NCBI RefSeq assembly: GCF_003918875.1
Contig: NW_025765359.1
Location: 682,001 to 746,000 of the forward strand
Reading direction: 5' to 3'
DNA: 64,000 nucleotides
Source of the DNA: Haliotis rubra
Lineage: Eukaryota
Part shown: positions 9,801 through 42,436 of the stretch, in pieces
Layout: each line of letters starts with the position of its first letter
How positions within the stretch are numbered: the first letter of the stretch is position 1
Translations under genes and position numbers: made by a program
The notes under the pieces: generated by a model
The model's input: only the letters and a program-made list of their open reading frames with translations
The model's database searches: none
Told to the model about the DNA's origin: nothing

Positions 9801-12800
9801 GTAAGCATACAGCGTCATCATAGCAAATGACGGCTATTAATTGTCAGTGAGAGTAACCTCCCCTTGCACTGTTCCCAACAAACAACTGAACATAGGAGTC
9901 TGTTGCTGAACTGAATACAGAGCTGTTGACCAAGAAAAAGCACCAGATTTTGTGTTGTTTACCAACTGCTCTCTGTCTTCCAGGTTTGAGTTCCATAACG
10001 TCTCAGGTCTGTCCCCAAACAAGGAGTACGAGTTCCGTGTCGTAGCTGAGAACTTCTATGGTCGCAGTGAAGCATGCGAGCCCACGACCACCATCAAGAC
10101 CGACGAGCCAGAGTCTGTCCGCAAGAAGAAACAAATGGAAGGTGAGTGTTCTGGCACACAGCTAGCTGAAATCTCCTTGAGGACAGTTGCTCTACAGGCT
10201 CTCACTCTAGTCGATGTCAAGAGCCCATTTAGATATCCAAATGTGCATATTCATGAAGATTAGTTTACTTCTGTGGTCATGGGTGGCTCAGTTGTATAAG
10301 GTGCCACTGTTTGCTGTGCAGAGTTGCTTCCCTTTGGCAATCCAGGAGCCTATAGTCATGGGTTTAAATCCCAGTTGGTGTGATTTTGCTCATCAGCACC
10401 ATTCATGTGTTCTTGGGTTTCAGCAAAATGGTGAAATCACATCTGAGACATTCAGTCTGTTAAATGATATGCAGTAAATAATAAGTAAGAAATAGATTCA
10501 ATATCATTGATCCTAAAATAATGAATTGTTTATCTTCATTTTTTTTGCAGATGAGTTTGGCAGAAAGGTCAGAGGCAAATACGATGGACCAAAGATCAAT
10601 GACTATGATAAGTTCTGTAAGTAAAGCTTTTCATCTACGTTACTTTCAAATTGTTAACTGTTATAGAGACTAAGAGCAAAGCTTGACGTGTAACTGTAGA
10701 ATACAATATATGTTCTGTACAATGCCTGTTCTATGTGCCACAGACGATGACATCTGGAAGAAGTTCGTGCCACAGCCTGTGACGGTGAAACAGGCCAGCG
10801 TGTACGACTACTACGACATCCTGGAGGAACTTGGAAGGTAGGAACACACAACTTACGAACATGAACAACTTAGGACATGAACTCTCAGCTCAGAGCAAGA
10901 TCCAGCACAGCTCGCCGGAAAAAGACATTATAATATATAATACACCCATATCTCCTCATTACAGCCATAGGTTATATCTGTTCCCACAATCACAATCCAG
11001 TTGGTAATCTCCTTTGGTATTCCTTCCGAAAGTGACTTGTCCTGGGTTTATATCCTGATTATGAGCCATAGTCATCTTCCATGCATCCATTCATTCAATA
11101 ACTATAATAGTCTTCATGTCATCTCTGAACTGTCAATTTACACATTTCGTATTATTATTCCAGTGGTGCTTTTGGTGTTGTCCATCGCTGTGTGGAGAAA
11201 GCAACAGGCCGCGTGTTTGTGGCCAAGTTCATCAACAGCCCCTACCCTCTGGACAAGGCCACTGTGAAGAACGAGATCAACATCATGAACCAGCTCCACC
11301 ATCCCAAGCTCATCAACATGCACGACGCCTTTGAGGATAAATACGAGATGGTTCTCATCCTGGAGTTGTAAGTAGCCCTTCCATGACGGCTGCTCCGAAT
11401 GTACCTTACAGAACTAAAATGTTGATACGAGCCAGTAGTCATGGTCAGCTTAGGTCAAGCTACCTTGTATTGCCTTGCACAAATTTATTCCAGTTTAGGT
11501 CAATTTCTATGTCTATTTGATGTAAAATTTTAGATAATGTTTTACATTGCTTTAGTATCACTCAGTGAAATGAGTGTCACATGCAGTGTCTCCTTGGGCC
11601 ACTGACATTGTTAGCAGTGGATGGGTACCAGGGAGAGTCAGATGATTTACATCATGGGCATTTTGGTTGTTGGGAATGAAAATAAAGTACTCTGATTCCT
11701 TGACCAGGCTGATATTGGGCTTTGAATATATATAATCAAGCGTTCAAGTAGCACTGTGCCAATGTTTTATGATCATTGTTATCATTATGATGATGACTGT
11801 TTGCATCCACAGCTTGGCTGGTGGTGAGTTGTTCGATCGTATCGCTGCTGAGGATTACAAAATGTCTGAGGCAGAGGTGATCAACTACATGAGACAAGTC
11901 TGTGAGGGTCTCAAACACATGCACGAAAACAGCATTGTCCACCTCGATATCAAGGTATGGTGAAGTTATATGGTCTGAAAATTTTATAATGTTTAACTAA
12001 CAATTCAGCAAGAAGAAAATCAATGTACATTTCATCTTCTTTGTGTATTAAAGGAGATAGGGTTACAGCATAGGTTTGTTGTGACTAAAGCTAAGGTAGA
12101 TTGCCAAATGCCAAGAACATGTGAAGACCATTCTTGGTGTAGCCTGCAGTGATATTTCCAGAAAACACCATGAAACTTACTTACAGCGGAATCCTTCTAA
12201 TACATGTGATCCAGTTTACTAAGGTTCAGTTTAAAATGTTAGAATCTTTACAATACATCATGTTGTGTTGTTTATTTGTTACAGCCGAGAATATTATGGT
12301 TGAAACCAAGAAAAGCACCAATGTCAAGATCATCGACTTCGGTCTTGCCACCAAGCTCAATCCTGATGAGATTGTCAAGGTTACCACAGCAACAGCGGAG
12401 TTTGCAGCCCCTGAGATTGTGGATCGTGAACCTGTTGGTTTCTACACTGACATGTGGGCAGTTGGTGTGCTCGCCTATGTTCTGTGAGTATCATGACATC
12501 TTAACACCTCTTTATATAAAGCCTTTTAGCTAAGAAAGAATATGATGTTTCTGAAGCTGTCGAGATGATATTTGTTTCATGCTACCTAAATTGCATTAAA
12601 AAGTTGTTTCATATTATTTGTGTGCTTCATTTCCCAGGTTGAGTGGATTGTCTCCCTTCGCCGGCGAAGATGACCTAGAGACTCTGCAGAATGTGAAGCG
12701 TTGTGACTGGGACTTTGACGAGGAAGCATTCAGCAATGTCTCCAAGGAGGCTAAGGAATTCATCAAGTCCCTCCTGGTCAAACAGGCGCCGTAAGTAGCC

Positions 12801-18800: not shown

Positions 18801-21800
18801 TGTTTATTCCAACCGGATACCCTTTCCCTGCTGGTGGAACTGAGGCGTATTTTTAGTAAAGAAAATGCCTACAGAAACACAACATGTGCTACTTGTGCTT
18901 CACACAATGTTTCAAATTTGCCATATTAAAGTTGTAAAATAGTTGGAAGGTGTATTTCACATTTGATGGCAGTGTCTCATAGTTATTGTCCGATTAATTG
19001 AAATAATCAAAGATTGGTCACAGTGACTAAACGACCAAGCAATCGAACATGTTTTCTCATAATCGAACGCATCCAACCTTGGAACACTTGTTTGCATCAA
19101 CAATATTTTTCACAAGGTTGCTTTTGTCTGTGTCATTAAATTTACATGTCATAAGCACAACAAGCTCGTTCCAAGTCATGATTGAATTTATCTTAAAGAA
19201 TCCAGGAAATTTGTTTCCTAACATACTAATAATCCTTTAAATATGCAAAATTTGCAAATGGATTTTGTTTAAATTGCAAACACAACCCAAATTACTACAT
19301 GTTTTTTCTTTATTTTTTACAAAGACAACAGGAACATTTCATAAATGACGCTAACCAATTATTTTCGATGATTGATCGGTTGTAATGGACCAATCATCAA
19401 TTATGAGATTTTAACCAATTCCCAACACTAGTGTCTCAGTATGTTTGACAACACTTGTAGGTACAATGGTCGAAGGACGGCCGTGACCTGTCTGACGGTG
19501 ACCACTTCAACATTACCTACTCCCACGGCGTGTGTACTCTGGAGATCCAGAACGCCCGTGTCGAGGACACTGGCAGATACACATGTGTGGCCACCAACCC
19601 CCTGGGCGACCACGAGACCAACACCCGAGTCACAGTTGAAGGTGAGACAGAACCCAGTCTGATTGGTTGGTTTGTTGTTTAACGCTGCACTCAGCAATAT
19701 TCCAGCTATATGGCGGCGGTCTGTAAATAATCAAGTCTGGACCAGACAATCCACTGATCAACAACATGAGCATCAATCTACACAACTGGGATCACGATGA
19801 CGTGTGTTAACCAAGTCAGCGAGTCTGACCACCCGATCCCGTTAGTCGAGCATGGGTTACTGAAGACCAATTCTAAACCCACACCTACATGGGAAGAACC
19901 CAGTCTGATGATTGTCAAGCCTCTGACATTACTAGGCCTGTTCCACAAAGTGTTTGTAGTGCTACCTTGTCTTAATTATATTCTGATCTATCAGAGTTAT
20001 AATTGTCTCAGTGCTGCATTCACTTTGTGGAGGGGCGGTGAGGTAGCCTAGTGGTTAAAGCGTTCGCTCATCATGCTGAAGACCTGGGTTCAGTTCCTCA
20101 CATGGGTACAATGTCTGAAGCCAGTTGGTGTCCCCCGCCATGATATTGCTGAAATATCGGTAAAAGCAGCGTAAAACTAAACTCCTCATTGTGGAGGAGA
20201 TCCCTCTTCCATTCCTGAGCTGACCTAAGTGGAGGAGAAGCTTATGTTCACTTGCACCAGGTCATGTGTGTGATGCATATACGTACTTCAGTATAACATC
20301 CAGTAGACCAACAGTTTTGTCATGGAACTGCCAGTTATTACACTCACAAAAATCTCAGTTCAACTCTGACTTTCCAGACTTTGTACCAAAACCAAAACGT
20401 CAGCTCCATTTTGTGTATGGAAGAACCTTATTGTCTCACAGTAGTATCATCCACATGTGAATTGTACAGGAGTAATTATGTATCAAATCAGACACTCAGT
20501 ATGTTTGTACCTGTCCACAGACCGTGTCCATGCTGGGGTGAAGGACAGTGACAGCAGCTCCAAGAGAACTGTGTCCCGTATGGCTCGCCGGACCAAGTCG
20601 TGGCGTCAACATTGAGGAGTACGAAGAGTCCTCCTCCTTCTCCACATCTTCTTCCTCCTCGTCCTCCAAGACACGCCGCTTCCAGCGAGAGGAAGTCACA
20701 GAGTCCTCTTCTTCCTCCTCTTCCTCAAGGAGAAAAGAGGAAAAACGTAAGTTCCAAATTCGAATATTCAGAAAGTGATGGAATAAGATATTGATTTATC
20801 GTTTCTTCAAAAAGATAATGTAAAACATCCAAGCGATATCTCTTTGTATTTGAATGGATTGAATGCCTGAAGCCATTTCTTGTGTGCCATATTAATGTAC
20901 TATTGCTGAATGTTTGCTACACCACGCTCAATTACACCTTTTGTTTGTTAGAGAAGGAATCATATATGTAGGCAATGGTTAAGATGTACGAAATGACAGC
21001 CAGTAAAATTGTTCCTTGGAATTTACTCCAGTCTTTGAATCCAAGGCCAAACATTCAGAGCAATGTTTCATATCAGTGAATGTTGTTTCAGCTGTAGAGG
21101 TGGTGCCACAGTTTTCTGAAAACCTCTCCCCTGTGTCCTTGACCGAGGGAGAACGGCTAGCTCTACAGTGCACCGTGTCCGGCAAACCAGAACCCAATGT
21201 TGAGTGGTACTTTAACGGACAGGTGAGTTATCTCCTCTTAGATGATGTCAGAATCCATTCCATAGAGTATAAAGCCAGAACCCATCCCACAGAGTCTGAG
21301 GCCAGAATCTTTTCTATAGAATCTAAAGCCAGAATCCATCCCACAGAGTCTAAAGCCAGTACCTATTCCATAAGGTCTAAAATGAGTACCAGTTCTACAG
21401 ATTGATCTATTTGATGTCTATCCAAAAATATTCCTTGTCAACATGTTCTTGCTTGTTGAAGGCAACCACATATCAAGGTCTGGTTTACCAGCTCCAACTA
21501 GCTCCAAGCGAAGCTACATACAGCAAGCTCTCTGGTACTCAAGGTCACATATCCAATATTACATCAGTTTCATTTTTGTTGCAGATGATGAAATCGGACG
21601 ACGTAGTATCTCTAAGTTATAGCAATGGTGTGTGTAAATTAGTTATTTCGGACACAGTTATAGACGACGAAGGTACCTACGTATGTAAAGCTTCCAACCC
21701 TGCAGGTGTTGCATCCACCAGAACCAACGTTACCGTTAAAGGTAGGGGAGAGAACTCTTGTCGTGTATATGTGTCTATTACTGCAATTTAGCATGGAATG

Positions 21801-24800
21801 ACAGGCATATTGGGTGTCGAAATAATCATATGTATTAGTATATCTAATAGATTCTCAATTGACATAAGGATGTTACATATTCGTTTCCTTTTCATCATTT
21901 GGTCCTCGTGAACATTGTGATAAAAAGTTATAGTTTTGCCAGACCAGTTTATATAAATATCTGTTTAACATTCTTCATCAATGCTCAAAAAGACCAGTTT
22001 GACAAATACAAATCATGACCATTCAATGATTTGGGGAACACAGTTTTGAAATAAGATTTAAACTAAAATATAAAGAAGAATATATTTTAGATTTGAAACA
22101 AAATTAACATATTTCCTTATCAGTGGAAACTTTTGCAAAAGTTCAGTCATGCTGATGTGCAAAACAAGAAACTGTTTTGATTATATACAGTAAGGAATCA
22201 TGAATATTTGTGGTGATATTTCTATGAGTTTATCTTCTCTGCAAACATGGTATGGTTTTACATGACATCAGAAATTTTGAAACTCTTGTAATGACCCTCA
22301 CAGTGCCTGTCCTTCCTTCATGTATATGTACTGTAGATTGTGTTCTTGTATTAACATCATTATACAATGTACAATGTATAGTCTGTTTCACCATGTATAG
22401 TCACTTTTCACAAAGTATAGTCAGTTTCACAATGTATAGTTGTTTCATAGAACTAATCAGTAAGCATGCATGTTGTAAAACTAATTGTACAGTCGCTAAT
22501 TCATTGGAAAAAAGTGCACTTTTTCATGTAACATTTCACAATTTTCTACAAAAATAAATGCACTTTATTCCACCTGTTGTAGAGTAGAAATTATATTTAT
22601 ATTCTATGTTGTCAGTAGATATTAATTCTAAATTAGGGTAGCTTTATAACTCTTACTATTATGTAACAATGATTTTAGGAGCTATTTATTTATGCTCCCT
22701 GCAAAAGTGTATTCATCTAACCTTGACCTTTTGCTGACCTGGCCTTGACCCCATTGTGTTCCAGGCAAGGTCACTCCCAGCGCCCCCAAACCAGCGGCAG
22801 CTCCTGCTGAAACAGAAAGTAATGAACTTGCTTGAGTTGATTTTGCTTTTTGGATAAACTATTAAGATTATTTGTGTGACATGCTTGTTTGATTAGTAGG
22901 ATTTAGAAATATACAAATTCCTCTTTTTCAGATTCATCCATGTACATATTTTCATTATATTATTTACGTTGAATTGTACATATATTTTCCAATTTTATTT
23001 TTATGTAACATATAGATGTGTCTGTCTGTGATACTGTATGTGTTTTAACATTCCTTTGTAACCATGACAACAGTAAATAATCCTGAGTAGCCTAACTGAC
23101 CATTCATATATCGCTTTCAACGTCACCCTAATGACTATGTTTGCTACCAACCCTAACTGTACGATCAAGCCTTTTTGATGTTGTTGCCATGGCAACAGAA
23201 CCACAAAATATATAATAGTTTTGATTTACATTTTACTTTGCGCAACATAAACAAATCCTTTCTGAACATTGTGTATGACAGTGATAGTTTGGAATATAAA
23301 TTACAGCGGTATTTTGGTAATTGTTTCAGAACTGTTTTTGGATTTCTTTGTTTTCTTGTAATTTTGTTCCAGCTAATATCTGTGATTGATTAAAACTCTT
23401 TGGTGTCTTTGACAACTCATGTAACATCTGTGATGATTTATTTTTGGAGTTGTGTGAATGACAGAACTCAGAATGAAACTGAAATTCGATGTCATTAAAT
23501 TGAATGAAACCTTTTAAAGTCTTTTCTTGTGAACAAAATGCAATCTTGATGTTAATGTTTTGGACATTTGTGTGAATGGTGTGAACAAAATTGACATTTT
23601 TCATATTTTGATTGAATAATGAAATGATGATTGTGATGATGAAAAAAAATCATGTGGAAAATTGCAAGTTTGTGAATAAAATTGAAAACTTCATTTATCA
23701 TATTGTGATTGTGGTATGTGAGCTTACATGGCTCAGAATGAGGCCCTTCTAACATTCTCTGTTTTCTTACCCTTTTATGCTGAGTGACATTGACCTTGAC
23801 ATTGACCTTAAGGTTCAAGGACAACTGTCAGGAATGACATCAAACTGTGAAACTTCAACAGAATACAGTACTCATGGCCAAAATACAGGAAACATGAAAT
23901 TGTATAACCTTAATCCTGTTCTGATGCGGAACAAGATGGCTGTAGTGACAAAACTAAAATCAGTGTCATACACGATAATTGTCAAGAAGTTTAAAAAAAG
24001 ACACGATCATGGCATTTGGAAGTTTGATTATTCAAATTGGTACATTTGAAAATGTACAAGAAATTCAATTTTATTCATTTCAAAAACAAAATGGTTGTAC
24101 TACAAGTATGCTGACAACTGAACATTGCCTTTCGTCAGGCTTGTAGGAATGTACGGTTTAATGGTCTATAATCAGGATACTTAGAACCTGACGTCCTACT
24201 GATCACCAATATACAGGGAAGCTATGTTACCTTGATCTTCATCTACATATTTCATAAAACAGTAATTTGACATTAAAATAGGGCATTGCTCATATTGATC
24301 ACTGGATTGTCTGGTCCAGGCTTGATTAATAACAAGTCCTCATCATATATCTTGAATAAAGTGTAATGTTAAACAACTAAACAAACAAACAAGTCTAAAG
24401 TTCTTGGCCTTTTTGTGATCAACATGTGTCAATACTGAAAGGGGACAGTGTGGTAACCTACTGGTTTCTCGTTAGCTCCCTCCAAAGACCTGTGTTTGAT
24501 TCCCAATGTGTACAATACGTAACACCAATTTCTGGCATCCCTCATCTTGATACGGGGCAGTGGGGTAGCCTAGTGGTTAAAGCGTTGGCTCGTCACGGCG
24601 AAGGCCTGGGTTCGAATCCCCACATGGGTACAATGTGTGAAGCCCATTTCTGGTGTCCCCTGTCGTGATGTTGCTGGAATATTGCTAAAAGCGGCATAAA
24701 ACCAAAACTCAGTCAGTCAGTCATCTTGATACTGCTTGAACAGGCTAAATGCCCCAGTCTGAAGAAAACATCAACCAAGTGGACATATGAGAAGGTATTT

Positions 24801-27800
24801 TGCCTCAAATATAAAGTACAATAATTTGATCAGCTGAACAGCTAGCTATTCAGTGTCCGAAATATACACTAATAATGGTTTCTGAAATATGTTGATGGCT
24901 TAGTGACCATGAAATGAATTTAAGATGTCGTGCTGGTGTGTACCTGCTAGTATCAATGGTTACTCCAAAGATCTCAAGCTAACATGGCTTCTCTGTATCA
25001 ACTAATGCCACTCCAGTAGATAGTACTGCTAATATTGTGTTCTCTCCCCCAGGCCAGCCAGAGCCTGTAGAGCCCCTGCCACCAGCGGACACGCCCGCAC
25101 CTGAACCAGAAAGTAATAGCTATCACTAACATGTGTAGAACTGAACCAAAGTACTGTCCATCACTGTCAGTTAGATGTAATCAGAAAATGCATGAAGAAA
25201 AATTCCTGAAGTTATTTTTCAAAGAAAACTAATGAATAAGGGAAATTGCTCTACATTTTAGAATTTGTCAACTTCTGAAAATGATATAGCAGCACTTGTG
25301 ACTTTGTTAGTCCAGTAGATAGTGATTGAATCTTCCCTTAGGCCACCCCCAGAGGACACTCCCGCACCTGCTCCAGAAAGTAATAGCTATCACTAACATG
25401 TGTAGAACTTAAAGACTCATGTCAGTTAGATGAATCAGAAAATGCATGAAGAAAAATTCCTGAAGTTATTTTTCAAAGAAAACTAAAATGATATAGCCCT
25501 TCTATGATGAATCTTCTTAGGCTGGTTTTGCTATTGGAACTTATAGACTCTGTAATGAATAAGGGAAATTGCTTTACATTTTTAGAATTTGTCAACTTCT
25601 GAAGCATTTTAATTTGGCTGATTAACTGTAGAAAGATACAGCACTTGTGACTTTGTTAATCCAGTAGATAGTGATTCTGATCACATTCTTCCCTCAGGCC
25701 AGCCAGCCCCTGTCGAGTCCGTCCCCCCAGAGGACACTCCCGCACCTGCTCCAGAAAGTAATTAACATGTGTCTTTTGAAATACATCCATATGACCCCCT
25801 CAAACTTTCCTGTTCCAATCTTTTGATATGTAGTAAAACATAAAGTCTGTACTGATAATTGTTTCGTGAAAACTCAGGTCAACACAATTACTAAGCTTTG
25901 TATCCAAAGTTGATCACCTGTAGTACTTAAAACTAGTACTTGACTAACTATTCCAGTATTAACCAATCCCTGTTTTCCTTCCCAGCACCAGTTGCAGAAC
26001 CAGCGGTGCCTGAGACAGAACCAGAATCTCAGCCACAAAGTACTTAACACTGTTGTTCAAGATTTTCTTTTTTTCAACTCTCACTTGTCTTCTTCCTTTC
26101 CTCTGTTTTTCAAAGTACCAAATTCACTCAAACTTCTGAAAGAACTGTCTATTTTCATTTGATTTTCATGTTCTTATTAAATGACATAAAACAAGTGACC
26201 CATGCAAAATAGTTTCTCGTCTTCACTGACCAACATATTGAAGCCAGCCCATAGATACAGAAAAAGTCAATATTTACCTGTCTTTTTGATGGAACAATCA
26301 AAGCACTGTGAAGAAAAGATTTCAATTCTTTCAATCGCTTTGGCCAATATATTTTAATCTGCTCATAACATGAGCAATTTGCAAAATTTTAAATGCTTAC
26401 TCTGTTTGACTTGAAAATGAAATGCATTAGATCTTTTAGATCTTCAGAGACTGCTTTCCTGAAAACTATTTCACACCACTATGTTGAATTGTCACATCAA
26501 GCAGGGATGCTCAAAAAGAATTAAAGAGTATGAGTATCTATCGGTGATTCCTATGTAGTATGAAGACACTGACAACACTCTGTTTCCATCAGCTAATACC
26601 ATTCTGCTTCTGTCAGATCCACCGACAGAAGAATCTCCTAGTTCCCCTCCCGGAACCAGAGACTCCTGTACAATGTAAATATACTAACACTCTATCCTAA
26701 TCCATGGATAACTTTAACACTTACTTATACATAACTCTTAAGCTTACTAAACTCTAAAGTATATTTTTCACATTAACAATGATTAATATTGACATGAACA
26801 TATTGAATGTTTTCATTACATGATAATATTTGACATTATTAGAGGACACTGTAATTCAGTGACTGAGATACTGTGAAATTAAAATGTGACTTTGTTCATT
26901 CATTCTTGGACTAAATTTCGCGGAGAATGGTATATTGAGCTGTTCTGAATGGAAGCAATATACCATACCATAGGCTTTAGTCGACTCTAAAAATGTCAAA
27001 TATTGTGTGATCATTTTCAGAGATGTAAGATTTATTACAAATTAATAAAGATTTATGAACAAATTATATATTTCTGCAAAAAGTTGCAGACCTTAGAAGT
27101 GTAATAATGCTTTCCAATTTCCTGAATTGTCTCCTGTGTGTCAAGCAGTTGTCTCCCCTGTCTGGGAGTTGTCTCCCATGTGTCCAGCAGTTGTCCCCCC
27201 TGTGTCTGTGCTGGTATTCCTAGCTTATTCCTCCTCTTCCTCCCAGCTGAAGAGAGTGCACCTGCACCTGCACCTGCCCCCGCCCCAGAGGCTGAGGCTC
27301 CCGCCCCCACCCCAGAGGCCGAGGCCACACAACCTACAGGGGGAGAAGAAAGTAATGGACAGTGTTGATTGGCGTGTTTGGTTCACACTGTTTCTTTCAT
27401 TCTTCTTAGGAAGTTTTGTTTCTTTACCTCTCTCCACTTCTCCAGGCATATTTCACTTTGAATATTTTGGTTACCCAAAATATATGATTGAATAAGATCC
27501 TACACATTTCTCAAGAAGGTGATTATCCCAGAAATATGATAGGCTAAGCAGGGCTCCAGATAATTTTTCAACATCAGGAGCACGTACTCCTTATATTTTC
27601 AATGCAGGAGTACTGGAAAAACATAAGAGTACATTCAGAGTACTGAATGGAATTTAATGGCGTATCAGTAATCTTGTGTTTCATTTCATATACGCACCAC
27701 AACATTGCTACTCTTGTGTAAACAGGTCAATAAACAATAACACAGTACTTTTTCAGATAAATACGTCTGTAAATGATTCTAAGACCGTACACCATTGCAG

Positions 27801-30800
27801 TGGTGCGTATCTGCTACGTTTTCTAAATTATTTCCTACCGTATCGTGCATATTTTTTATCCGTACATACGCCGATACGGCCCTCATCTGGAGCCCTGCTA
27901 AGATCATGATCACGATGGAGACTCAAGAAGGTGTTGAATCCAATCCAATGAAATATGCCTGTGCTTCATCGTCTTCCTTCATGTCTGCCTCGTCTTTCAG
28001 TTTCTGGTGAATGACATTCTCAGATACCCTTGGTAGTAAAACTGTTACATTATTGTATTTCCCTCACAATTTACAAAAATACAGTCTGTGGTTGAGGTCA
28101 CTATAATGGGGATCTGATGACACAGTGATTGCTATGAAGGGATAGCCCACAGACTGGAAGCCATCAGGAACATCTGTTATTGGCTGTTTGTTGGTCATAG
28201 TACCAACAAAATGCATAGATCATGCACTCCATCCAACATGCATAGATCATGCACTCCATCCAACAGATCATGCACTCCATCCAACATGCATAGATCATGC
28301 ACTCCATCCAGCAGATCATGCACTCCATCCAACATGCATAGATCATGCACTCCATCCAACATGCATAGATCATGCTCTACGTCCAACATGCATAGATGTG
28401 AATCAAGCTGTCAAAATCATATCTGACCGTACTCACTACTTAAATTCGGAATACAACCTCCTCCCTTCAGGCCGCCGCTACAAAGTTCCAATTGTGAAAA
28501 CTAAGAGAGCCAGTACATCCTTTATTCCAAGTACCATATCTCTCTTAAACAAATGTGAAGATACCTAAATCAAAGAATTTATGTAAATATGTTTGGTATC
28601 TCTCTAATGTGTCAGTAGCTATGCTGATGTAACACAAATTCCTNNNNNNNNNNNNNNNNNNNNNNNNNNNNNNNNNNNNNNNNNNNNNNNNNNNNNNNNN
28701 NNNNNNNNNNNNNNNNNNNNNNNNNNNNNNNNNNNNNNNNNNNNNNNNNNNNNNNNNNNNNNNNNNNNNNNNNNGCATAGATCATGCTCTACATCCATCA
28801 TGCATAGATCATGCACTGTCCAACATGCATAGATCTTGCACTGTGTCCTACATGTCAAACTCTGACTCGCTCACTTAACCTGCCACGCCATGTTCAGGGT
28901 ATGCATGCAGCATTCATGCACATAGGCAGGTGTGCCATTGTATCTGTCGATGTAGCCTCATTATGTCAATCACTGGATTGTCTGGTCCAGACAGTTTTCA
29001 TGGAGTGGAAACATTTCTGAGCGTGCATTAAATGATAAACAGAAACAAACATAAGCAGGTGACACTTAAACAAAATTCTTTAAATTCTTGCATTCAGATT
29101 AAAACATACCCTGGGTGATGAGAATGACATCTTTTAAAATTCTGTTTCATCTTCTCCTTCTTCAAGTCTTATTTCTAGTTAGTTTTTATCTTGTTTTATC
29201 TTGTGTGAATTTCATCTTTTTTTCAGAGTTTGACATGTGTGAATTTTGCTGATCGTGCTGACCAATCTTTTAATGAATGCCACATTGTGTCTTTTTAGAT
29301 AGAAATAAGATGAGACTCTTTTTTTATCATGCCCACAATAGTTGCAGGTGTGTGACAATTTTAGTTTGCTTGACTAAAATGCACAACTTAGTTGGGTACA
29401 TTTGTCAATGCCATGTGTTTTGGTACTTTATAAACGTAATGTATGTACTCATTCATGTGTTCAGCAGTAAAACAGAACTAACATGAAAAAGTATAAAGAT
29501 ATCTAAGGCGATACTTTTTAAATATAAGTTATTTGGGATGTAAAAAGTACAAAGTGAAAAAATAACCATGGAATCTCCTTTTTTGTGCCAAAGATTTACA
29601 TAAGACCATTCAAAATGGTCAGACAGAGGTGGATCCAGGATTTTGGAGAAGGGGTGCACATAAATCATGAAGTACAAACGTTAGGGAGAAATGCTCCTCA
29701 GGGAAAGATTTTTCCAGGGTGTGTGGTGTGCGTGTGTGCTTACACACCCTCTCTGTTGTTTTGGCCTTTGATCCAAGCTCCTTACAGCATTAAGCCCATG
29801 TGCTCTCTATGCTGGGACAAAACAAAACAAAAGTGGCACGCACTGAATAGGAGCTTGTGGTTTTATCAAGTCAAGGGAGATTACTCTCATTCTTCACCTC
29901 CCGACTCACTGCATATGTTCAACCATATGACCATATGAAATTAACTTTTTTGAACGGAAGAAATAAAAAGTATCGCCAAACATAAAATCTGATGTAACTT
30001 TGATTGCTCAAAATAATGTTTCTTTGTTTTCAGCAGAGCAGACAGCCGAATCTTAAGTCAGCCCATTGTCCTTCTCTTCCTTAAGACCCCCCTCTCAATG
30101 AACACATATTATTTTTTTATTTGTTTTTTAGTCAAATTTGAGTTCCCATGAGGCTTCAATATAATCTTGTCATTCATGAGATTGTCAGGTTTACCATAAA
30201 ATTTGAAGTCTATTTACATGATAAGATCCAGCAACATACTCTAAGTAGCCTGAGAGAATTTATTGTTAGAACAAATATTTTTGTAATGTATACATGACTA
30301 GTTGTAGTGTAAATATTAGTTGCATGCCTAAGCATGAATAGAAAATATATTTATATTTATATTATATTTATAGAATCTATAACATACATATTTTGAAGTA
30401 TGTAAGTAAAAAATGATTTAAAAAGCGTAACAGATCCAAATATGAAATGGTCCAAAAAGTCTAAAGACATTAAAATATATTTTAAAAAGTAATGCAAGCC
30501 ACATTTAAATTGATTCAAAATTTATGGTAACATTGATCATCTGGATATCATTCATGACATTTTTATATTTGCGGTCATTGGTCATTTCATTGATATGATT
30601 TTTATGAAGTCAGTTTGTTCAAAATATATACACTCAAAATCAAACCCATAGATTAATTGTCCACCCACCCACCTCACAGACCACCCTCTGTATCCAAACA
30701 ACCCTACCCACCTTCACTAGTCTACCTTCACCCCGGTATAAAAACTTCCTGCACTCTCAACCCAATAACTTACACCAGGGGAGTGAATCACTGGCTGGAA

Positions 30801-33800
30801 GCCATTTTGTTTTCTCACCATGAGAAAGCGTCCTGATTGGCTGACACACAAGTCGTTGAGTTATCCCCCCTTGGGATTGACTGCATTGACCAGGGAACTT
30901 CTCTGAATGCAACACAAGACCCAGGAATATTGCAAGACTAATTATTCAATATGTTGAGAGTGCTTTGGGAGTCTCACTGCCGCCAGACTTACCATACAGG
31001 TACAATGGAGAAAATTTTATTTGCTTTTGAGTAAAATGAATATTTTCATCCTGTGTCACAAATATGATAGGGACAAAACATGTTTTTAATATAATTTTTT
31101 ATGATAAGATATATCAGTATGTTTTACAGATGTAGTTTTGAAGTTTTTTAAAATATTTTCAGCAGTTTGTCAGCTGACTTAACAGTAAATAGTACTGTAT
31201 TTGTGTATCGTAACGCATGTTGTCTAGTGTTCATGGCGTAGTAGCTTAGATAAGCATGAGCACAACGTGGCACAATTGATTGTGGATATACACACACTGA
31301 TGTCACACTTATATATCCTTGTATGACATAACTCAACATTTACTTTCAGCTACAATTGTCCACATACTAAGAAAAGAAATATATTTGTTATTTCTTTTAG
31401 TGGTCTCTAATGAGTGAAATATTTTTTAAACTTTCTTGGAAAACATCTGATCTTTATCCATGTTTCACTAGGTTATTTTGATTGTCCATGAAAAAAAAAT
31501 TATTACTTATCTCTGTGATGTCAGTGATGGTTGTTGGCTGGCAAATAGTATTTCTTTTGTTTTTGGTCTGTTCTCATGTTTACTGTATTTCGAGTATGTT
31601 GGTGACAAGAGATGAAGGACAAATATTCATATTCAGACGTATTTTTGGGATATATTCTCTTTCTAAATGTAGCTCCATTAAGTCAATACTGGTAGCATTA
31701 ATTCTATCCTGAAACTGTTCAAATAAAGAATCTACTCGAGTGGAAGCAGTTGTATTCAAAGGATTATACTCAATTAAGTGATTGCTACATTTTTTTTAAT
31801 AATTATAGTCATAACCTGTGCCAAATTCTTTTCTAATATTTATAAGAATTTAGAAGTCATGTTCAGTGTATCTACAATCCATATTTTAGAAGAACCCGTT
31901 GCCCCTGCTCCAGGGAAGAAATCTGACATTGAAGTCCCAAGTTTCCTAGACCAAGTTCAAGGTCAGATTGTTCTAGATGGAGACCAGGTGACCTTCCAGT
32001 GCAGGATATCAGGTAGATATACACTTTGATATGATGGATATAAACTTTGTATATACACTGTACATACACATGCAGGTATAGAGTTTATACCATGCTACCC
32101 TGACAATTATAAGGTTTATGCAATGTTACACTGACAGATATACACTTTGATATGATGGATATAAACTTTGTATATACATACACATGCAGGTACATAGGCG
32201 GATCCAGAGGGGGGGTGCAGGGTTGCGCACACCCACCCCCCTTGTGCTGAAAGTTTGTCATAAAAGACCATTGAAACTCGGGTGAAAATGAAGTGTGCAC
32301 CCCTCCTTTTCTCAATAGTGTGCACCCCCCCTTTCTCAAAAAGCTGTATCCGCCTCTGAGGTATAGAGTTTTTACCATGCTACTCTGACAATTATAAGGT
32401 TTATGCAATGTTACACTGACAGATATACAGTTTATACCTTGTAACACATACTGACTGACAGATGCAACATTTATATCATATTATCTGACCTGAAATCAAA
32501 TGCCTTAAGCTTCATGGACTTTATACTACAGAGTTCTGCCCAGATGAGTTGTCTGCTTGATTTACGGGTCATCTCCTTACATTTTAAGTAAAAGATTCAA
32601 CATATTAGCATACAAAGAAATATTGGGGTAAAACAATATTAAGAATTTATCACTTGTGCACGATACATTCATCTGTAAAGTACATTGTTCTGGCATTACT
32701 TGACAGTTTCATGTTAAAATATTCTTAAATGGTATTGCCCAAGTATTGTCTAACACTGGCAAAATATTGTCCAGTATTGTCCTAGCATTATTCTAGTACT
32801 GTACTTTCATTGGCCTTATGTTGTTGATTATTGTACAAATATTGTCCAAGTATTGTCCTAGCATTGTCCTGGTACTTTCTAGTATTGCCCAACATTGTCC
32901 TAATACTGGTCTAGTATTCACCAATACTGTCATAGTACTGGCCTAGTATTGTCCTTGTACTGACCTACCCTTGCCCACTATTGTCCTTGCATTGTCTTAG
33001 TACTGGTCTAGTATTGTCCAACATTGTCCTTGTAGTGGCCTAGTATTGTCCAATATTGTCCTAGTACTGGCAGGGTATTGACCAGTATTGTCCTAGCATT
33101 GTCTCAGTTTTGTCATCAGACAACAGACGATAACCCAACCCTTGTTTGACCAGGTAACCCTGAAGTCCAATGGTTACGGGAAGGCAAGACAATCAAGGAC
33201 TGTGGAGACTTCCAGTACGAGAAGTCTGGCGATAGCTACAAACTGGTAATGGCTGAGGTGTTTCCCGAAGACAGTGGTGTTTACGAGTGTGTCGCTACCA
33301 ACGCTGCTGGATCAATCTCAAGTGCTGCCTCGCTACTCGTACAAGTTCCCGATGAGAAACCAACCGGTCCTGTTTTCGTCACATTCCCCAAGTCCCAAAA
33401 CGCGGATGAGGGGAGTTCTGTCAAGTTGTCTTGCAGTGTAGAAAGCCAGTCTTCACCTACAGGTATGTCACAGTATGCTTTTATCACTTATTGAAGTCTG
33501 ACCAGTGAAGATCCGAGGTAGAATAGGTCTTCAGCAACCAAAGGTGACTATGCTTGTCGTAAGAGGCGACTAACGGGATCGGGTAGTCATGCTCGCTGAC
33601 TTGGTTGACACTTGCCATCGGTTCCAAATTGCTTGGATCGATGCTCATGCTGTTGATCACTGGATTGTCTGGTCCAGACTCGATTATTTACACACTGCCA
33701 CCATATAGCTAGAATATTGCTGAGTGTGGTGTAAAACTAAAATCACTCACTCACTTATAGAAGTCTTGTTTACCCCAAATCTCAGATTCTACCTTATCCT

Positions 33801-39805: not shown

Positions 39806-41571
39806 AAAGACCAACCATTTGACAATCGGTTGAACAACCATCCAGACAACAGCAAGGTACACTAGGATGAACAACAAACACAGACTTCATATCACTGGTT
39901 TATTGGCTGAATGTTGTAGCCAGAGACGCAGACTCGCTACATCAACAGGTTGGCAGCCATCTTGGAAAGCTGGTCCTTCTAACAAAACATGTCATTGATT
40001 TCAACACAGTCACACACGCCTGAGGAAGCTAACAAAACAGTCTTCAATTTCATATAATTCGGACACAGAAACACTCTCTGTGAAACATTGTCCGAACAAA
40101 TTTAATTCTAGTTCCCATCTTCTGCCATTTTAAGCTGATAACTGAAAATTGCCTTGTAGGAAAGAAATACAAAGTCTTTGGATTAATTTTGAGTATTTTG
40201 TCATAGTAATCTTCACAAATTGAAATTACGCTGAACAAGTTCATGGTGAGTTTGTGGGTGGGTGACTTTACATTTATGCCACTTTTAGCAATATTCCAGC
40301 TATGTCAAGACAGGGGACACCTGAAATGAGGGAGTCTTTATTGAATGAACCTCAACTGATTCACTGCAACCTGTCGGCCATTTCAGACCGATTTCTTTTT
40401 CTCGGATAAAGAATAGTCTCAGACAAATAGTACGACCAAATACACAACAAACCCTTTGTATCTGACTGCATACGTATATAATATGCATCTTTCCATACAA
40501 GAATAAGTTATTCCATGTAACTCAAATACACTGATACAAAAATAAAATATCTGTCCCAGTGTCATATTAGTTGTGACCTCAATTAGAAAAGAGAACATTG
40601 TTCCATTTTTTCAGACTACTTTGATGTTAACTGAGGGCAGAGTAAACAATCTGTTTGAGAGCCTCAGCAAATATCCAAATTCTTATAAATGTGAAAAAAC
40701 TATGACTAAGACACCCAAGTTTCACTGTTTCAGCTTTTGAGAGGGGGTACAAGCCCCCCACAGATATTCCAGCAAGGGATTCAGCTACTGGTGTTAACAT
40801 ACGATTCAAAATGGGTCTGATTTAACACCACTTGTAGCAATATTCCAGCAATATCACGACTGGGGACTCCAGAAATGGGCTTCACACATTGAACCCATAT
40901 GGGGAATTGAACCCATGTCTTCAGCGTGACAAGTGGACACTATCACCACTAGGCTACCTACCCACCTATGCTCAAAATTCAAAATTGCATCTGACTACTA
41001 TGACCACCAGACCAAAGAATGCTTGCCTCTGATTGGTCAAAACAGGATGAATATCAGGTAACAAGTTGCATTCAATACTTTTAAGTTCCATATTCATCAC
41101 ATCTAGTATTAATTGCCTATTGTCTCTATCAGCTTCTATAAGAGGAGAAAAACCACATTCAATTTCCAAACTACAGTAATGGTTACCATGGTAACAGTCT
41201 TGCTTCACACATCCTATTTACCTATGCATCAACTAGTTCTTTTGTAGTCTTGCAAAAACATCTGCACCAAAACAATCCATATTAGGCTTAACATGAACAA
41301 CATTTCATAGAACACTGCCAATTCATGAAAATTATATGAACTGTGTAAAGAACCAGATTTCAGAGCATTAACAGGAGTACACACTCATATATGGTACACA
41401 GTTCCTATCAGAACAGTCAAGCTTGTATAATAACTGGACCCTCTAGATTTTCACTTGTCTCGGACTAACTGACAAGTGGACATCACTGCTTTAGGGGAGC
41501 TATTACAGTTATGAAACATTCATTCATACAAACATCTGCCACCACCATAACAAACTTAATACCAACCACCC

Positions 41572-42436
41572 TGACAAAGATGTCTAGTCTTACAGCATGA
41601 GTTGTGCATCCTTGATGGTCAAAGATGTCTAGTCTTACAGCATGAGTTGTGCATCCTTGACTGTCAAAGATGTCTAGTCTTACAGCATGAGTTGTGCATC
41701 CTTGACTGTCAAAGATGTCTAGTCTTACAGCATGAGTTGTGCATCCTTGACTGTCAAAGATGTCTAGTCTTACAGCATGAGTTGTGCATCCTTGACTGTC
41801 AAAGATGTCTAGTCTTACAGCATGAGTTGTGCATCCTTGACTGTCAAAGATGTCTAGTCTTACAGCACGAGTTGTGCATCCTTGACTGTCAAAGATGTCT
41901 AGTCTTACAGCATGAGTTGTGCATCCTTGACTGTCAAAGATGTCTAGTCTTACAGCACGAAGTTGTGCATCCTTTGATGGTCAAAGATGTCTAGTCCGAC
42001 AGCAACGAGTTGTGCATCCTTGACTGTCAAAGAGTTGTGCATGCAAAGATGTCCTTGACATCCGTTGTCAAAGATGTCTAGTCTTACAGCATGAGTTGTG
42101 CATCCTTGACTGTCAAAGATGTCTAGTCTTACAGCACGAGTTGTGCATCCTTGACTGTCAAAGATGTCTAGTCTTACAGCACGAGTTGTGCATCCTTGAC
42201 TGTCAAAGATGTCTAGTCTTACAGCACGAGTTGTGCATCCTTGACGGTCAAAGATGTCTAGTCTTACAGCACGAGTTGTGCATCCTTGACTGTCAAAGAT
42301 GTCTAGTCTTACAGCACGAGTTGTGCATCCTTGACTGTCAAAGATGTCTAGTCTTACAGCACGAGTTGTGCATCCTTGACTGTCAAAGATGTCTAGTCCT
42401 ACAGCACGAGTTGTGCATCCTTGACTGTCAAAGATA
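41572..42436. repeat. 45-bp minisatellite, about 19 units
   Basis: gactgtcaaagatgtctagtcttacagca(t/c)gagttgtgcatcctt. Confidence 0.95.

What the first reader, a model, noticed from the sequence alone, without database searches (positions are those of the whole stretch)
22765..27351. PEVK-like array of phase-1 cassette exons in the twitchin C-terminal region
Seen: six to seven short Pro/Ala/Glu-rich exons (54, 60, 38 or 27, 60, 54, 51-58 and 105 nt) between the third and fourth post-kinase Ig domains. They are phase 1-1 and mostly share the weak donor GAAA|GTAAT. Established: titin and insect projectin tune elasticity by splicing PEVK exons, but those regions lie N-terminal of the kinase. Inference: a combinatorially spliced elastic spacer of up to ~140 aa just downstream of the candidate PKA site, which could change tether length between muscle types.
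Basis: partly seen in the sequence, partly recalled or inferred. Interest (0 to 1): 0.72.

Follow-up and report, generated by a model that had tools for sequence, protein, structure and literature searches.

The report
Alternatively spliced proline-rich spacer in abalone twitchin
Between two domains near the tail of an abalone's giant muscle protein twitchin lies a row of tiny duplicated exons encoding a floppy, acidic Pro/Ala/Glu-rich spacer that database models of a sister species include in full, in part or not at all, so the spacer can vary from 0 to about 150 residues; what that length variation does is untested.

Summary
On the + strand, seven short Pro/Ala/Glu-rich exons lie between the third and fourth post-kinase Ig domains of a twitchin gene. 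All are phase 1-1. Five end in GAAA|GTAAT, a 9-mer that occurs nowhere else in the 64 kb. A blind scan finds such exons only here.

I obtained no RNA evidence: the three runs found were DNA. NCBI models of Haliotis cracherodii twitchin-like (X1-X10) carry the same linker. Five include every exon, one skips D, one keeps A+G, one keeps G only and one has none. The junction residues of those models match what the window's exon edges predict.

Listed isoforms from seven other mollusc groups show a short, invariant linker at this position. Where scanned, their Lys-rich PEVK-like segment is N-terminal. The array therefore looks like an abalone-lineage expansion, and it is still turning over:
- Exon C is an unequal-crossover hybrid of B and D.
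- Exon F is 58 nt against 57 nt in the congener, possibly an assembly indel.
- An eighth exon of the congener has decayed here.

AlphaFold2 predicts an unstructured linker between two confident Ig folds. Elasticity, tether length and tissue specificity remain inference. The composition is acidic and Lys-poor, so this is not classical PEVK. No paper in the searchable library describes it.

The parts
20520..20745 (+). Constitutive Ser-rich linker exon between post-kinase Ig2 and Ig3, holding the conserved RRTKS site (candidate PKA site D2). It gives context for the array.
   Evidence: 100% and 81% identity to H. cracherodii residues 3655-3731. RRTKS or a near variant is conserved in Littorina, Biomphalaria, Mytilus and Crassostrea. 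The window has one extra T at 20601.
21585..21741 (+). Second exon of post-kinase Ig3. It is the upstream constitutive exon and ends in phase 1 (AAAG|gtaggg).
   Evidence: 96% identity to the H. cracherodii protein; I-set.
22765..22818 (+). Mini-exon A, 54 nt, phase 1-1, peptide (G)KVTPSAPKPAAAPAETE, donor GAAA|GTAAT.
   Evidence: 82% identity to H. cracherodii exon A. Present in isoforms X1-X7 and skipped in X8 and X9.
25053..25112 (+). Mini-exon B, 60 nt, phase 1-1, peptide (S)QPEPVEPLPPADTPAPEPE, donor GAAA|GTAAT.
   Evidence: A related DNA sample carries an in-frame 6-nt deletion at 25072.
25113..25352 (+). Intron B-to-C, the first copy of a duplicated intron.
   Evidence: Colinear with 25380-25697, with long blocks identical or nearly so.
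25342..25379 (+). Mini-exon C, a hybrid copy. Its upstream flank is D's and its downstream flank is B's, with a 22-nt internal deletion. It is 38 nt from the ancestral acceptor (frame-breaking) or 27 nt from an internal CAG at 25350-25352 (in frame, (K)DTPAPAPE). Whether it is used is unknown.
   Evidence: No counterpart in the ten H. cracherodii models.
25380..25697 (+). Intron C-to-D, the second copy of the duplicated intron, with two insertions.
25698..25757 (+). Mini-exon D, 60 nt, phase 1-1, peptide (S)QPAPVESVPPEDTPAPAPE, donor GAAA|GTAAT. It is a paralogue of B.
   Evidence: Skipped alone in H. cracherodii X4.
25986..26039 (+). Mini-exon E, 54 nt, phase 1-1, peptide (T)PVAEPAVPETEPESQPQ, donor CAAA|GTACT.
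   Evidence: 82% identity to H. cracherodii exon E.
26215..26266 (+). Possible decayed remnant of the congener's eighth exon E2 (SQPIDTE against SQPTETE, followed by GAAAAAGTCAAT). It has no AG acceptor and two in-frame TGA. Low confidence.
26617..26674 (+). Mini-exon F, 58 nt. Its first half reads (N)PPTEESPSSPP and its second half EPETPVQ, in frames one base apart. It aligns without gaps to H. cracherodii F, NPPIVEAPGSVQEPLSPVQ (57 nt), at 11 of 19 positions. The extra base lies near 26650-26656, in a C-rich run.
   Evidence: As written, the 58-nt form puts TGA at the start of G. The in-frame alternatives are 33 nt (26642-26674) and 51 nt (26617-26667).
27247..27351 (+). Mini-exon G, 105 nt, phase 1-1, peptide (x)EESAPAPAPAPAPEAEAPAPTPEAEATQPTGGEE, donor GAAA|GTAAT. 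It contains an internal 27-nt direct repeat.
   Evidence: 91% identity to H. cracherodii G, with a 2-aa indel. It is the most often retained cassette: present in X1-X8 and skipped only in X9.
31890..32012 (+). First exon of post-kinase Ig4. It is the downstream constitutive exon and starts in phase 1.
   Evidence: (92.5% identity).

Best explanation
The array is a set of real, translated mini-exons of the abalone twitchin gene. Together they encode an intrinsically disordered, acidic Pro/Ala/Glu(Thr)-rich linker between the third and fourth Ig domains after the kinase.

Why they can act as cassettes:
- Every intact exon is symmetrical (phase 1-1), as are both flanking Ig exons.
- Every cassette donor is weak, with A or T at -1 and no G at +5.
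- The splicing machinery can therefore include or skip exons without breaking the frame.

In a congener this gives a linker of 0, 33, 51, 131 or 151 residues.

The array arose by serial duplication of a mini-exon together with its donor, and it is still being remodelled by unequal crossing-over, small in-frame indels and exon decay. It appears to be an expansion of the abalone lineage.

Inferred, not shown: the linker works as a variable-length flexible or polyproline-II-like spacer. On that reading it changes the reach or compliance between the Ig2-D2-Ig3 module and the terminal Ig4-Ig5 pair. In Mytilus that module binds actin and myosin in a phosphorylation-dependent way; that is my recollection of Funabara and colleagues, not read here.
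For: Gene identity:
- The kinase exon is 94% identical to the Aplysia twitchin kinase 1KOB.
- The exons are 81-100% identical to H. cracherodii twitchin-like.

Exon anatomy and non-randomness.

Translation and cassette use:
- Ten RefSeq models, XP_071104531-541, contain the orthologous peptides in the patterns all / minus D / A+G / G only / none.
- The codons split across junctions in those models (G, S, S, T, N, T, K; Ala for Ig3-to-G; Glu for Ig3-to-Ig4) are the ones the window's exon edges predict.

Coding constraint on frame but not on sequence:
- Linker exons are 74-91% identical between the two abalones, against 93-96% for the flanking Ig exon pieces (Ig3b, Ig4a, Ig4/5).
- The indels seen are in frame: 6 nt in B and 2 aa in G.

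Weak donors: 0 of 7 have +5G, against about 23 of 25 constitutive donors.

Disorder: in an AlphaFold2 model with an 11-sequence alignment, Ig3 and Ig4 have pLDDT about 90. The linker has pLDDT 43-57 and no secondary structure.

Lineage restriction:
- Each of the other groups examined has a single short linker sequence across all listed isoforms: 12 Littorina, 11 Biomphalaria, 15 Physella, 13 Mytilus, 18 oyster, 17 scallop and 11 Octopus sequences.
- Caenogastropods have 6-16 extra P/A/E/K residues at this position.

Duplication mechanism: B, C and D share their intron flanks, and the two introns around C are colinear copies.
Against: - No RNA of this species or of any abalone was examined here. 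The only runs found held the introns too, so they are DNA.
- The isoform evidence is NCBI's automated annotation of another species. I could not inspect the transcript support behind each model, their abundance or their tissue of origin.
- In this assembly F is 58 nt and C is 38 nt from its first AG. Both would break the frame if used as such.
- Sequence conservation of the linker is low, and exons are being gained and lost. That pattern also fits weak selection on the linker.
- Nothing tested here bears on elasticity or on binding partners.
Confidence: 0.72

Rival explanations
1. The linker is essentially constitutive. The full-length form is the only abundant product, and the shorter annotated isoforms reflect rare splicing noise at weak donors.
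For: Five of the nine H. cracherodii models that reach Ig4 carry all seven exons. Weak donors invite occasional skipping. No abundance or tissue data were available.
Against: Four distinct shorter patterns were annotated, including complete removal. All exons and both flanks are kept symmetrical. The weak donor has been kept through repeated duplication, although a single base change would strengthen it.
Confidence: 0.15
2. The segment is mainly a docking or regulatory platform rather than a mechanical spacer. It would offer proline-rich ligands for SH3 or WW domains, or Ser/Thr-Pro phosphorylation sites, and splicing would change which sites are present.
For: Five of the six exon peptides tabulated (A, B, C, D, G) hold one TP or SP motif. 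PxxP-like runs are abundant. The segment lies next to the phospho-regulated D2 region.
Against: No residue motif apart from DTPAP is conserved between paralogous exons. Sequence identity between two abalones is only 74-91%. There are no matches to any Pfam family. Exons are gained and lost quickly. This reading does not exclude the spacer reading.
Confidence: 0.15
3. The array is a nearly neutral by-product of exon duplication in a tolerant inter-domain linker. Its length varies because nothing depends on it.
For: Birth and death are visible in the window: hybrid exon C, a decayed E2 and a possibly frameshifted F. Sequence divergence is fast. Other molluscs manage with 0-16 extra residues.
Against: The frame, the composition and the splice signals of A, B, D, E and G are kept in two species. 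The indels seen are in frame. Exon G+C is 0.55-0.69 against 0.35 in the introns, which argues against decaying sequence.
Confidence: 0.12
4. The exons are not used at all in this species and are relics of an array that is active only in relatives.
For: The frame-breaking lengths of C (38 nt) and F (58 nt) in this assembly. No RNA from this genome was seen.
Against: A, B, D, E and G are intact, with open frames and splice sites. The same assembly has a +1 frameshift in a constitutive, conserved exon, so single-base indels here are likely errors.
Confidence: 0.03

Closest known systems
Titin PEVK segment (vertebrate I-band)
   Same: A disordered Pro-rich segment between Ig domains. It is encoded by many short symmetrical exons, and differential inclusion sets its length (as summarised in PMC3835035). 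It works like a length-adjustable linker.
   Different: - Titin's segment is N-terminal of the kinase, hundreds to over 2000 residues long, and built of about 28-residue PPAK repeats and poly-E blocks rich in Lys and Val.
- The abalone linker is C-terminal of the kinase and at most about 150 residues.
- It has K 2% and V 5%, is uniformly acidic, and matches no Pfam family, PPAK included.
Insect projectin PEVK region
   Same: It belongs to the same protein family (twitchin/projectin). It has short exons, a highly divergent primary sequence between species and alternative splicing, giving 34 to 624 residues (PMC3835035).
   Different: The projectin region lies between the N-terminal Ig tracts. 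The mosquito twitchin retrieved here has no insert between the homologous post-kinase Ig domains.
N-terminal PEVK-like domain of molluscan twitchin (the 'small PEVK-like domain' of Mytilus twitchin, Funabara 2003, as cited in PMC12040844)
   Same: Same protein, same phylum, and also low-complexity and Pro/Glu-rich.
   Different: In Mytilus, oysters, scallops, Littorina, Babylonia, Biomphalaria and Physella that domain is at residues about 440-960 and is Lys-rich (KPEEKK and PEPPKPE repeats). The abalone array is at the other end of the protein and lacks Lys. Whether abalone also has the N-terminal domain was not settled. The H. cracherodii models are about 700 residues shorter at the N-terminus and show no such window.
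Short P/A/E/K-rich Ig3-Ig4 linker of caenogastropod twitchin (Littorina, Babylonia, Nucella, Batillaria)
   Same: Same position and similar flavour, for example VAKKAAPAKEPEAVEAPKETPAEK. It is possibly the ancestral seed of the array.
   Different: It adds only 6-16 residues, contains Lys, and is identical in all 12 listed Littorina isoforms, so no cassette use is annotated there.
(Ala-Pro)n and Pro/Glu rods such as the N-terminal extension of vertebrate myosin essential light chain A1 or the TonB spacer (my own knowledge, not tested here)
   Same: Exon G (APAPAPAPAPEAEAPAP) resembles these semi-rigid polyproline-II spacers, which hold a binding element at a distance.
   Different: There is no homology. 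Those are fixed-length segments, not spliced cassettes.

Membership tests
Twitchin (UNC-22/projectin family giant kinase) | MLCK-like kinase domain closest to known twitchin kinases | tested here: met
   Window 11129-11368 is 94% identical over 70 aa to Aplysia twitchin kinase 1KOB, E 2.7e-40. C. elegans twitchin comes next. Pfam Pkinase is found in the H. cracherodii orthologue.
Twitchin (UNC-22/projectin family giant kinase) | Fn3/Ig modules before the kinase and five Ig domains after it, with a phosphorylatable linker (D2) between post-kinase Ig2 and Ig3 | tested here: met
   Fn3- and Ig-like open frames lie upstream. There are three plus two I-set domains after the kinase. RRTKS is conserved.
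Alternatively spliced cassette exons | Symmetrical phase, so that skipping keeps the frame | tested here: met
   A, B, D, E and G are multiples of 3 in phase 1-1, and both flanking exons are phase 1. C (38 nt) and F (58 nt) as written are exceptions.
Alternatively spliced cassette exons | Transcripts both with and without the exon | tested here: inconclusive
   Annotated RefSeq isoforms of H. cracherodii show five linker patterns. No RNA reads were seen here, and the runs found were DNA.
Alternatively spliced cassette exons | Splice sites weaker than those of constitutive exons in the same gene | tested here: met
   Cassette donors are AAA|GTAAT, AAA|GTACT and AAT|GTAAA, with 0 of 7 having G at -1 or +5. 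About 23 of 25 constitutive donors have G at +5.
Titin-type PEVK domain | Composition dominated by P, E, V and K (about 70% or more) | tested here: not met
   P+E+V+K is 58%. K is 1.8%, V 5.3% and A 21%.
Titin-type PEVK domain | PPAK repeats of about 28 residues or poly-E motifs | tested here: not met
   No Pfam family matches the 166-aa H. cracherodii linker, even at E up to 10.
Titin-type PEVK domain | Lies in the extensible region, N-terminal of the kinase | tested here: not met
   The array is after the kinase, between post-kinase Ig3 and Ig4.
Titin-type PEVK domain | Unstructured chain acting as an entropic spring | tested here: inconclusive
   AlphaFold2 gives pLDDT 43-57 and no secondary structure for the linker. 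Elasticity itself cannot be tested with these tools.
Projectin / molluscan twitchin N-terminal PEVK-like domain | Position between the N-terminal Ig tracts, near site D1 | tested here: not met
   Other molluscs have theirs at residues about 440-960. This array is at about 3828-3978 of 4200.

The most novel reading that the evidence does not exclude
Abalones have evolved a second spring at the C-terminal end of twitchin, by birth and death of mini-exons. It sits directly after the phospho-regulated Ig2-D2-Ig3 module that in mussels tethers thick to thin filaments. Muscle-type-specific splicing of it (0 to about 150 residues, roughly 0 to 45-55 nm of contour length) would set the reach and compliance of that tether. 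That would give a molecular handle on how a gastropod tunes long-lasting holding force in foot and shell muscle against fast muscles.
Probability: 0.22. Interest if true: 0.72.

Novelty: new variant of a known kind. Interest (0 to 1): 0.5.

Why it matters
Length-adjustable disordered segments are the accepted way in which titin and projectin set passive stiffness. In those proteins they lie in the extensible N-terminal part.

Here the same genetic design sits after the kinase of twitchin, one Ig domain downstream of the conserved D2 phosphorylation site linked to catch regulation. The design is symmetrical mini-exons, weak donors, and inclusion of all, some or none.

If the isoforms prove tissue-specific, the catch or holding tether becomes testable by comparing natural splice forms.

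The locus is also a clean small example of how such arrays grow. One exon is a fresh unequal-crossover hybrid whose two flanking introns are still colinear copies.

Tempering this:
- The exons and isoforms already exist in automated RefSeq annotation of a sister species.
- The functional claims are untested.

Tried and rejected
1. RNA evidence. The look-up of sequencing runs on 21000-27500 returned only three runs of one sample. Read laying showed that their contigs cover the introns, so they are DNA, about 2-4% different from the window. My 6.5-kb query was probably too intron-rich to bring up RNA holders, so the blank says nothing about expression.

2. The search of protein representatives with the Ig4/5 exon. 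Ranking by summed Ig-domain score filled the top 150 with obscurin, titin and hemicentin. No mollusc twitchin appeared. Its one use was to yield a mosquito twitchin (P0036) as a full-length carrier for the word search.

3. The look-up of encoding contigs for the H. cracherodii proteins found nothing on record. I therefore could not compare the congener's genomic exons, introns or donors.

4. A third word search for other abalone twitchins found only the H. cracherodii cluster.

5. Searching the window's own assembly for a second haplotype of the array found one copy only. The 58-nt length of F could not be checked.

6. Rbfox-type UGCAUG motifs: three on the + strand in or just upstream of the array (22467, 25189, 25443), which is not above background. 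The window total is 68 against 58 +/- 9 expected. Rejected as evidence of regulation.

7. Pfam scan of the linker gave nothing.

8. ARAGORN on the SINE-like insert gave no tRNA call.

9. The alternative 3' end of H. cracherodii X10 (…GGEETEQAVES) has no recognisable counterpart between 27352 and 31889.

Procedure notes:
Exons were searched one by one by reference.
- In one script I concatenated four exon peptides only to count their length.
- The N run at 28644-28774 was left untouched.

Full report
**What the window holds**

The + strand of the first ~34 kb carries the 3' part of a twitchin gene.
- An exon at 11129-11368 encodes a kinase segment 94% identical to the crystallised Aplysia twitchin kinase (1KOB, E 2.7e-40). 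C. elegans twitchin is the next best match.
- Open frames upstream read as Fn3 and Ig modules.
- Earlier notes of this scan call the genome an abalone. I confirmed this indirectly: the window's exons are 81-100% identical at protein level to 'twitchin-like' of Haliotis cracherodii. They are not identical to it, so the window comes from another Haliotis.
- The assembly has 1.378 Gb in 2855 contigs.

**The observation**

Reading the sequence gives the following.
- The second exon of post-kinase Ig3 ends at 21741 in phase 1.
- Seven short exons follow: A 22765-22818, B 25053-25112, C 25342/25353-25379, D 25698-25757, E 25986-26039, F 26617-26674 and G 27247-27351.
- The first exon of Ig4 starts at 31890, also in phase 1.
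- A, B, D, E and G are multiples of three and read in phase 1 as Pro/Ala/Glu-rich peptide.
- The 9-mer GAAAGTAAT occurs five times in the 64 kb, on one strand only, each time as the donor of A, B, C, D or G.
- A blind scan of both strands for phase 1-1, stop-free, Pro-rich AG...GT segments returned 19 + strand hits. All lie in 22765-27363 and collapse onto exactly these seven loci. Shuffled sequence gives 0.77 hits on average.
- Exon G+C is 0.55-0.69 and intron G+C is 0.35.

The description is accurate and far from chance.

**Are the exons used?**

I could not obtain RNA.
- Laid on 21500-27499, their contigs cover the introns. They are therefore DNA of another individual or a close relative, 2-4% divergent.
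- They still add three points. Exon B carries an in-frame 6-nt deletion there. Exon A has one synonymous change and one Thr-to-Pro change. A 179-bp SINE-like insert (24544-24722) is absent.

The protein databases were more useful.
- A full-length mosquito twitchin, and then a Littorina twitchin, served as length-compatible carriers for the word search.
- That led to the RefSeq cluster of H. cracherodii twitchin-like isoforms X1-X10, XP_071104531-541.

Between Ig3 and Ig4 these models read: G-KATPSAPKPVAAPAEPE, S-QPAPVEATTPADTPAPAPE, S-QPAPVESTPSADTPAPEPE, T-PASEPAVPETAPESQPQ, T-MTDPPTADEPESEPSQPTETE, N-PPIVEAPGSVQEPLSPVQ, T-EESAPAPAPAPEAEAPAPTPEAPATQPTGGEE, then K-EPIAPAP.... These are the orthologues of A, B, D, E, an extra exon E2, F and G.

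The isoforms differ exactly at exon edges.
- X1, X2, X3, X5 and X6 have all seven exons.
- X4 lacks D.
- X7 has A+G.
- X8 has G only.
- X9 joins Ig3 directly to Ig4.
- X10 ends shortly after G.

The residues created by codons split across junctions are the ones the window's nucleotides predict: Gly at Ig3|A, Ser at A|B, Thr at D|E, Asn before F, Lys at G|Ig4, Ala at Ig3|G in X8, Thr at A|G in X7 and Glu at Ig3|Ig4 in X9. This independently checks the exon boundaries.

To my knowledge, NCBI's pipeline predicts alternative isoforms only where transcript alignments support the distinguishing introns. I could not inspect that evidence, nor abundance or tissue.

**Splice signals**

tblastn of the congener protein against the window marks some 25 constitutive exon ends. 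About 23 of them have G at +5 (GTAAGT, GTGAGT, GTATGT and similar), and many have G at -1. None of the seven cassette donors has G at -1 or at +5. The acceptors have ordinary polypyrimidine tracts. Weak donors combined with symmetrical phase are the usual anatomy of regulated cassettes. UGCAUG motifs are not enriched.

**Nature of the peptide**

- Over the six exon peptides A, B, C (27-nt form), D, E and G, the composition is P 32%, A 21%, E 19%, T 8%, V 5% and K 2%.
- Each of these exons is neutral (A) or acidic, summing to about -23. Five of the six hold one TP or SP motif.
- No Pfam family matches, the titin PPAK motif included.
- An AlphaFold2 model of H. cracherodii Ig3-linker-Ig4, built with eleven aligned mollusc sequences, gives two confident Ig folds (pLDDT about 90). 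They are joined by about 160 residues with pLDDT 43-57 and no secondary structure.
- By textbook values (0.31-0.38 nm per residue), about 150 residues span up to roughly 45-55 nm, against about 4 nm for an Ig domain. That figure is an inference.

**Distribution**

- For seven other mollusc groups I extracted the Ig3-Ig4 interval from every listed isoform. These were 12 Littorina, 11 Biomphalaria, 15 Physella, 13 Mytilus, 18 oyster, 17 scallop and 11 Octopus sequences.
- Within each species the interval is a single sequence, and it is short.
- Bivalves, heterobranchs and Octopus have essentially no insert. Caenogastropods have 6-16 extra P/A/E/K residues.
- The alignment shows a single abalone-specific insertion of about 150 columns.
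- In representative isoforms of those groups the PEVK-like low-complexity region is N-terminal (residues about 440-960). Except in Octopus it is Lys-rich. This matches projectin (PMC3835035) and the 'small PEVK-like domain' reported for Mytilus twitchin (PMC12040844, citing Funabara 2003).
- Only up to 15 isoforms per cluster are listed, and no other vetigastropod could be examined.

**How the array evolves**

- B and D are paralogues, and both species have them.
- C is new. Its upstream flank is D's and its downstream flank is B's.
- The introns B-to-C and C-to-D are colinear copies with long identical blocks. That is what an unequal crossover between misaligned B and D produces.
- The crossover left a 22-nt deletion. 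C is therefore 38 nt from its ancestral acceptor (frame-breaking), or 27 nt from an internal CAG.
- E2 of the congener has only a stop-containing, acceptor-less remnant here, near 26215-26266 (low confidence).
- F aligns without gaps to the congener's F at 11 of 19 positions, but only if one base near 26650-26656 is ignored.
- The same assembly has an extra T at 20601, inside the conserved constitutive exon, right after RRTKS. A single-base assembly error is thus a realistic explanation for F as well. I could not decide this.

**Interpretation**

Shown:
- The gene is twitchin.
- The exons, their phases and their donors are as described.
- Annotated proteins of a congener include them in five patterns.
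- The linker is predicted to be unstructured.
- The expansion is lineage-restricted.
- The array grows by duplication.

Inferred:
- The segment acts as a variable-length spacer or spring.
- Splicing is regulated between muscles.
- The length matters for the neighbouring D2 module.

I searched papers on twitchin with splicing, PEVK and abalone and found no description of this array. It is, however, already present in automated RefSeq annotation.

**Verdict**

- This is a new variant of a known kind: a post-kinase, acidic, abalone-lineage analogue of the titin/projectin PEVK cassette array.
- Interest is moderate.

Noticed in passing
window 20586-20612: There is one extra T at 20601, directly after the conserved RRTKS (candidate PKA site D2) in a constitutive coding exon. 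The frame shifts relative to H. cracherodii (…RRTKS|GVNIEE…) and runs into a stop. This is most likely an assembly indel, and it warns that other single-base frame problems here (exon F) may be errors.
   Followed up: partly
window 24544-24722: A 179-bp SINE-like insert with a tRNA-like head lies in the A-B intron. It belongs to a family with enormous summed depth in the DNA runs and has several copies elsewhere in the window. It is precisely absent from the contigs of the related DNA sample (the record runs from 24543 straight to 24723). ARAGORN calls no tRNA.
   Followed up: partly
window 25342-25379 and 26617-26674: C from its first AG is 38 nt (2 mod 3) and F is 58 nt (1 mod 3). A transcript with both would return to frame in G, after reading D, E and half of F in a second, stop-free frame. 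This is probably coincidence.
   Followed up: no
window 25487-25530: Inside the C-to-D intron there is a short extra fragment resembling the end of the B-to-C intron plus an acceptor and exon start (…AAAATGATATAGC…GAATCTTCTTAG|GC). It hints at a further, mostly deleted duplication unit.
   Followed up: no
window 28121-28920: A minisatellite lies in the G-to-Ig4 intron (it reads HRSCTPSNM… in one frame). It includes the masked N run 28644-28774, which I left as it is.
   Followed up: no
H. cracherodii proteins P0311 (X10) and P0315 (X1): Isoform X10 ends seven residues after exon G (…GGEETEQAVES) and so lacks Ig4 and Ig5. I found no counterpart of that terminal exon between 27352 and 31889 of the window.
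   Followed up: partly
H. cracherodii isoforms, residues about 249-309, 533-547, 1026 and 1732-1739 of X1: Other alternative segments of the same gene are a substituted stretch of about 60 residues near 249-309 in X6, a 15-aa cassette TETGEIVTIKLNTEE, a 6-aa micro-exon MGPPGS and an 8-aa KILDGKGH.
   Followed up: no
window 41486-42522: A long tandem array is open in several frames on both strands (…DIFDSQGCTTRAVRL… repeated). It lies downstream of the twitchin gene and was not examined.
   Followed up: no
P0315 (H. cracherodii X1), whole length: The only Pro/Glu/Val/Lys/Ala-rich windows in the 4200-aa model are the C-terminal linker. The N-terminal PEVK-like domain seen in other molluscs is not in the model, which is about 700 residues shorter at its N-terminus. 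Whether abalone lacks that domain, or the model simply misses it, is open.
   Followed up: partly
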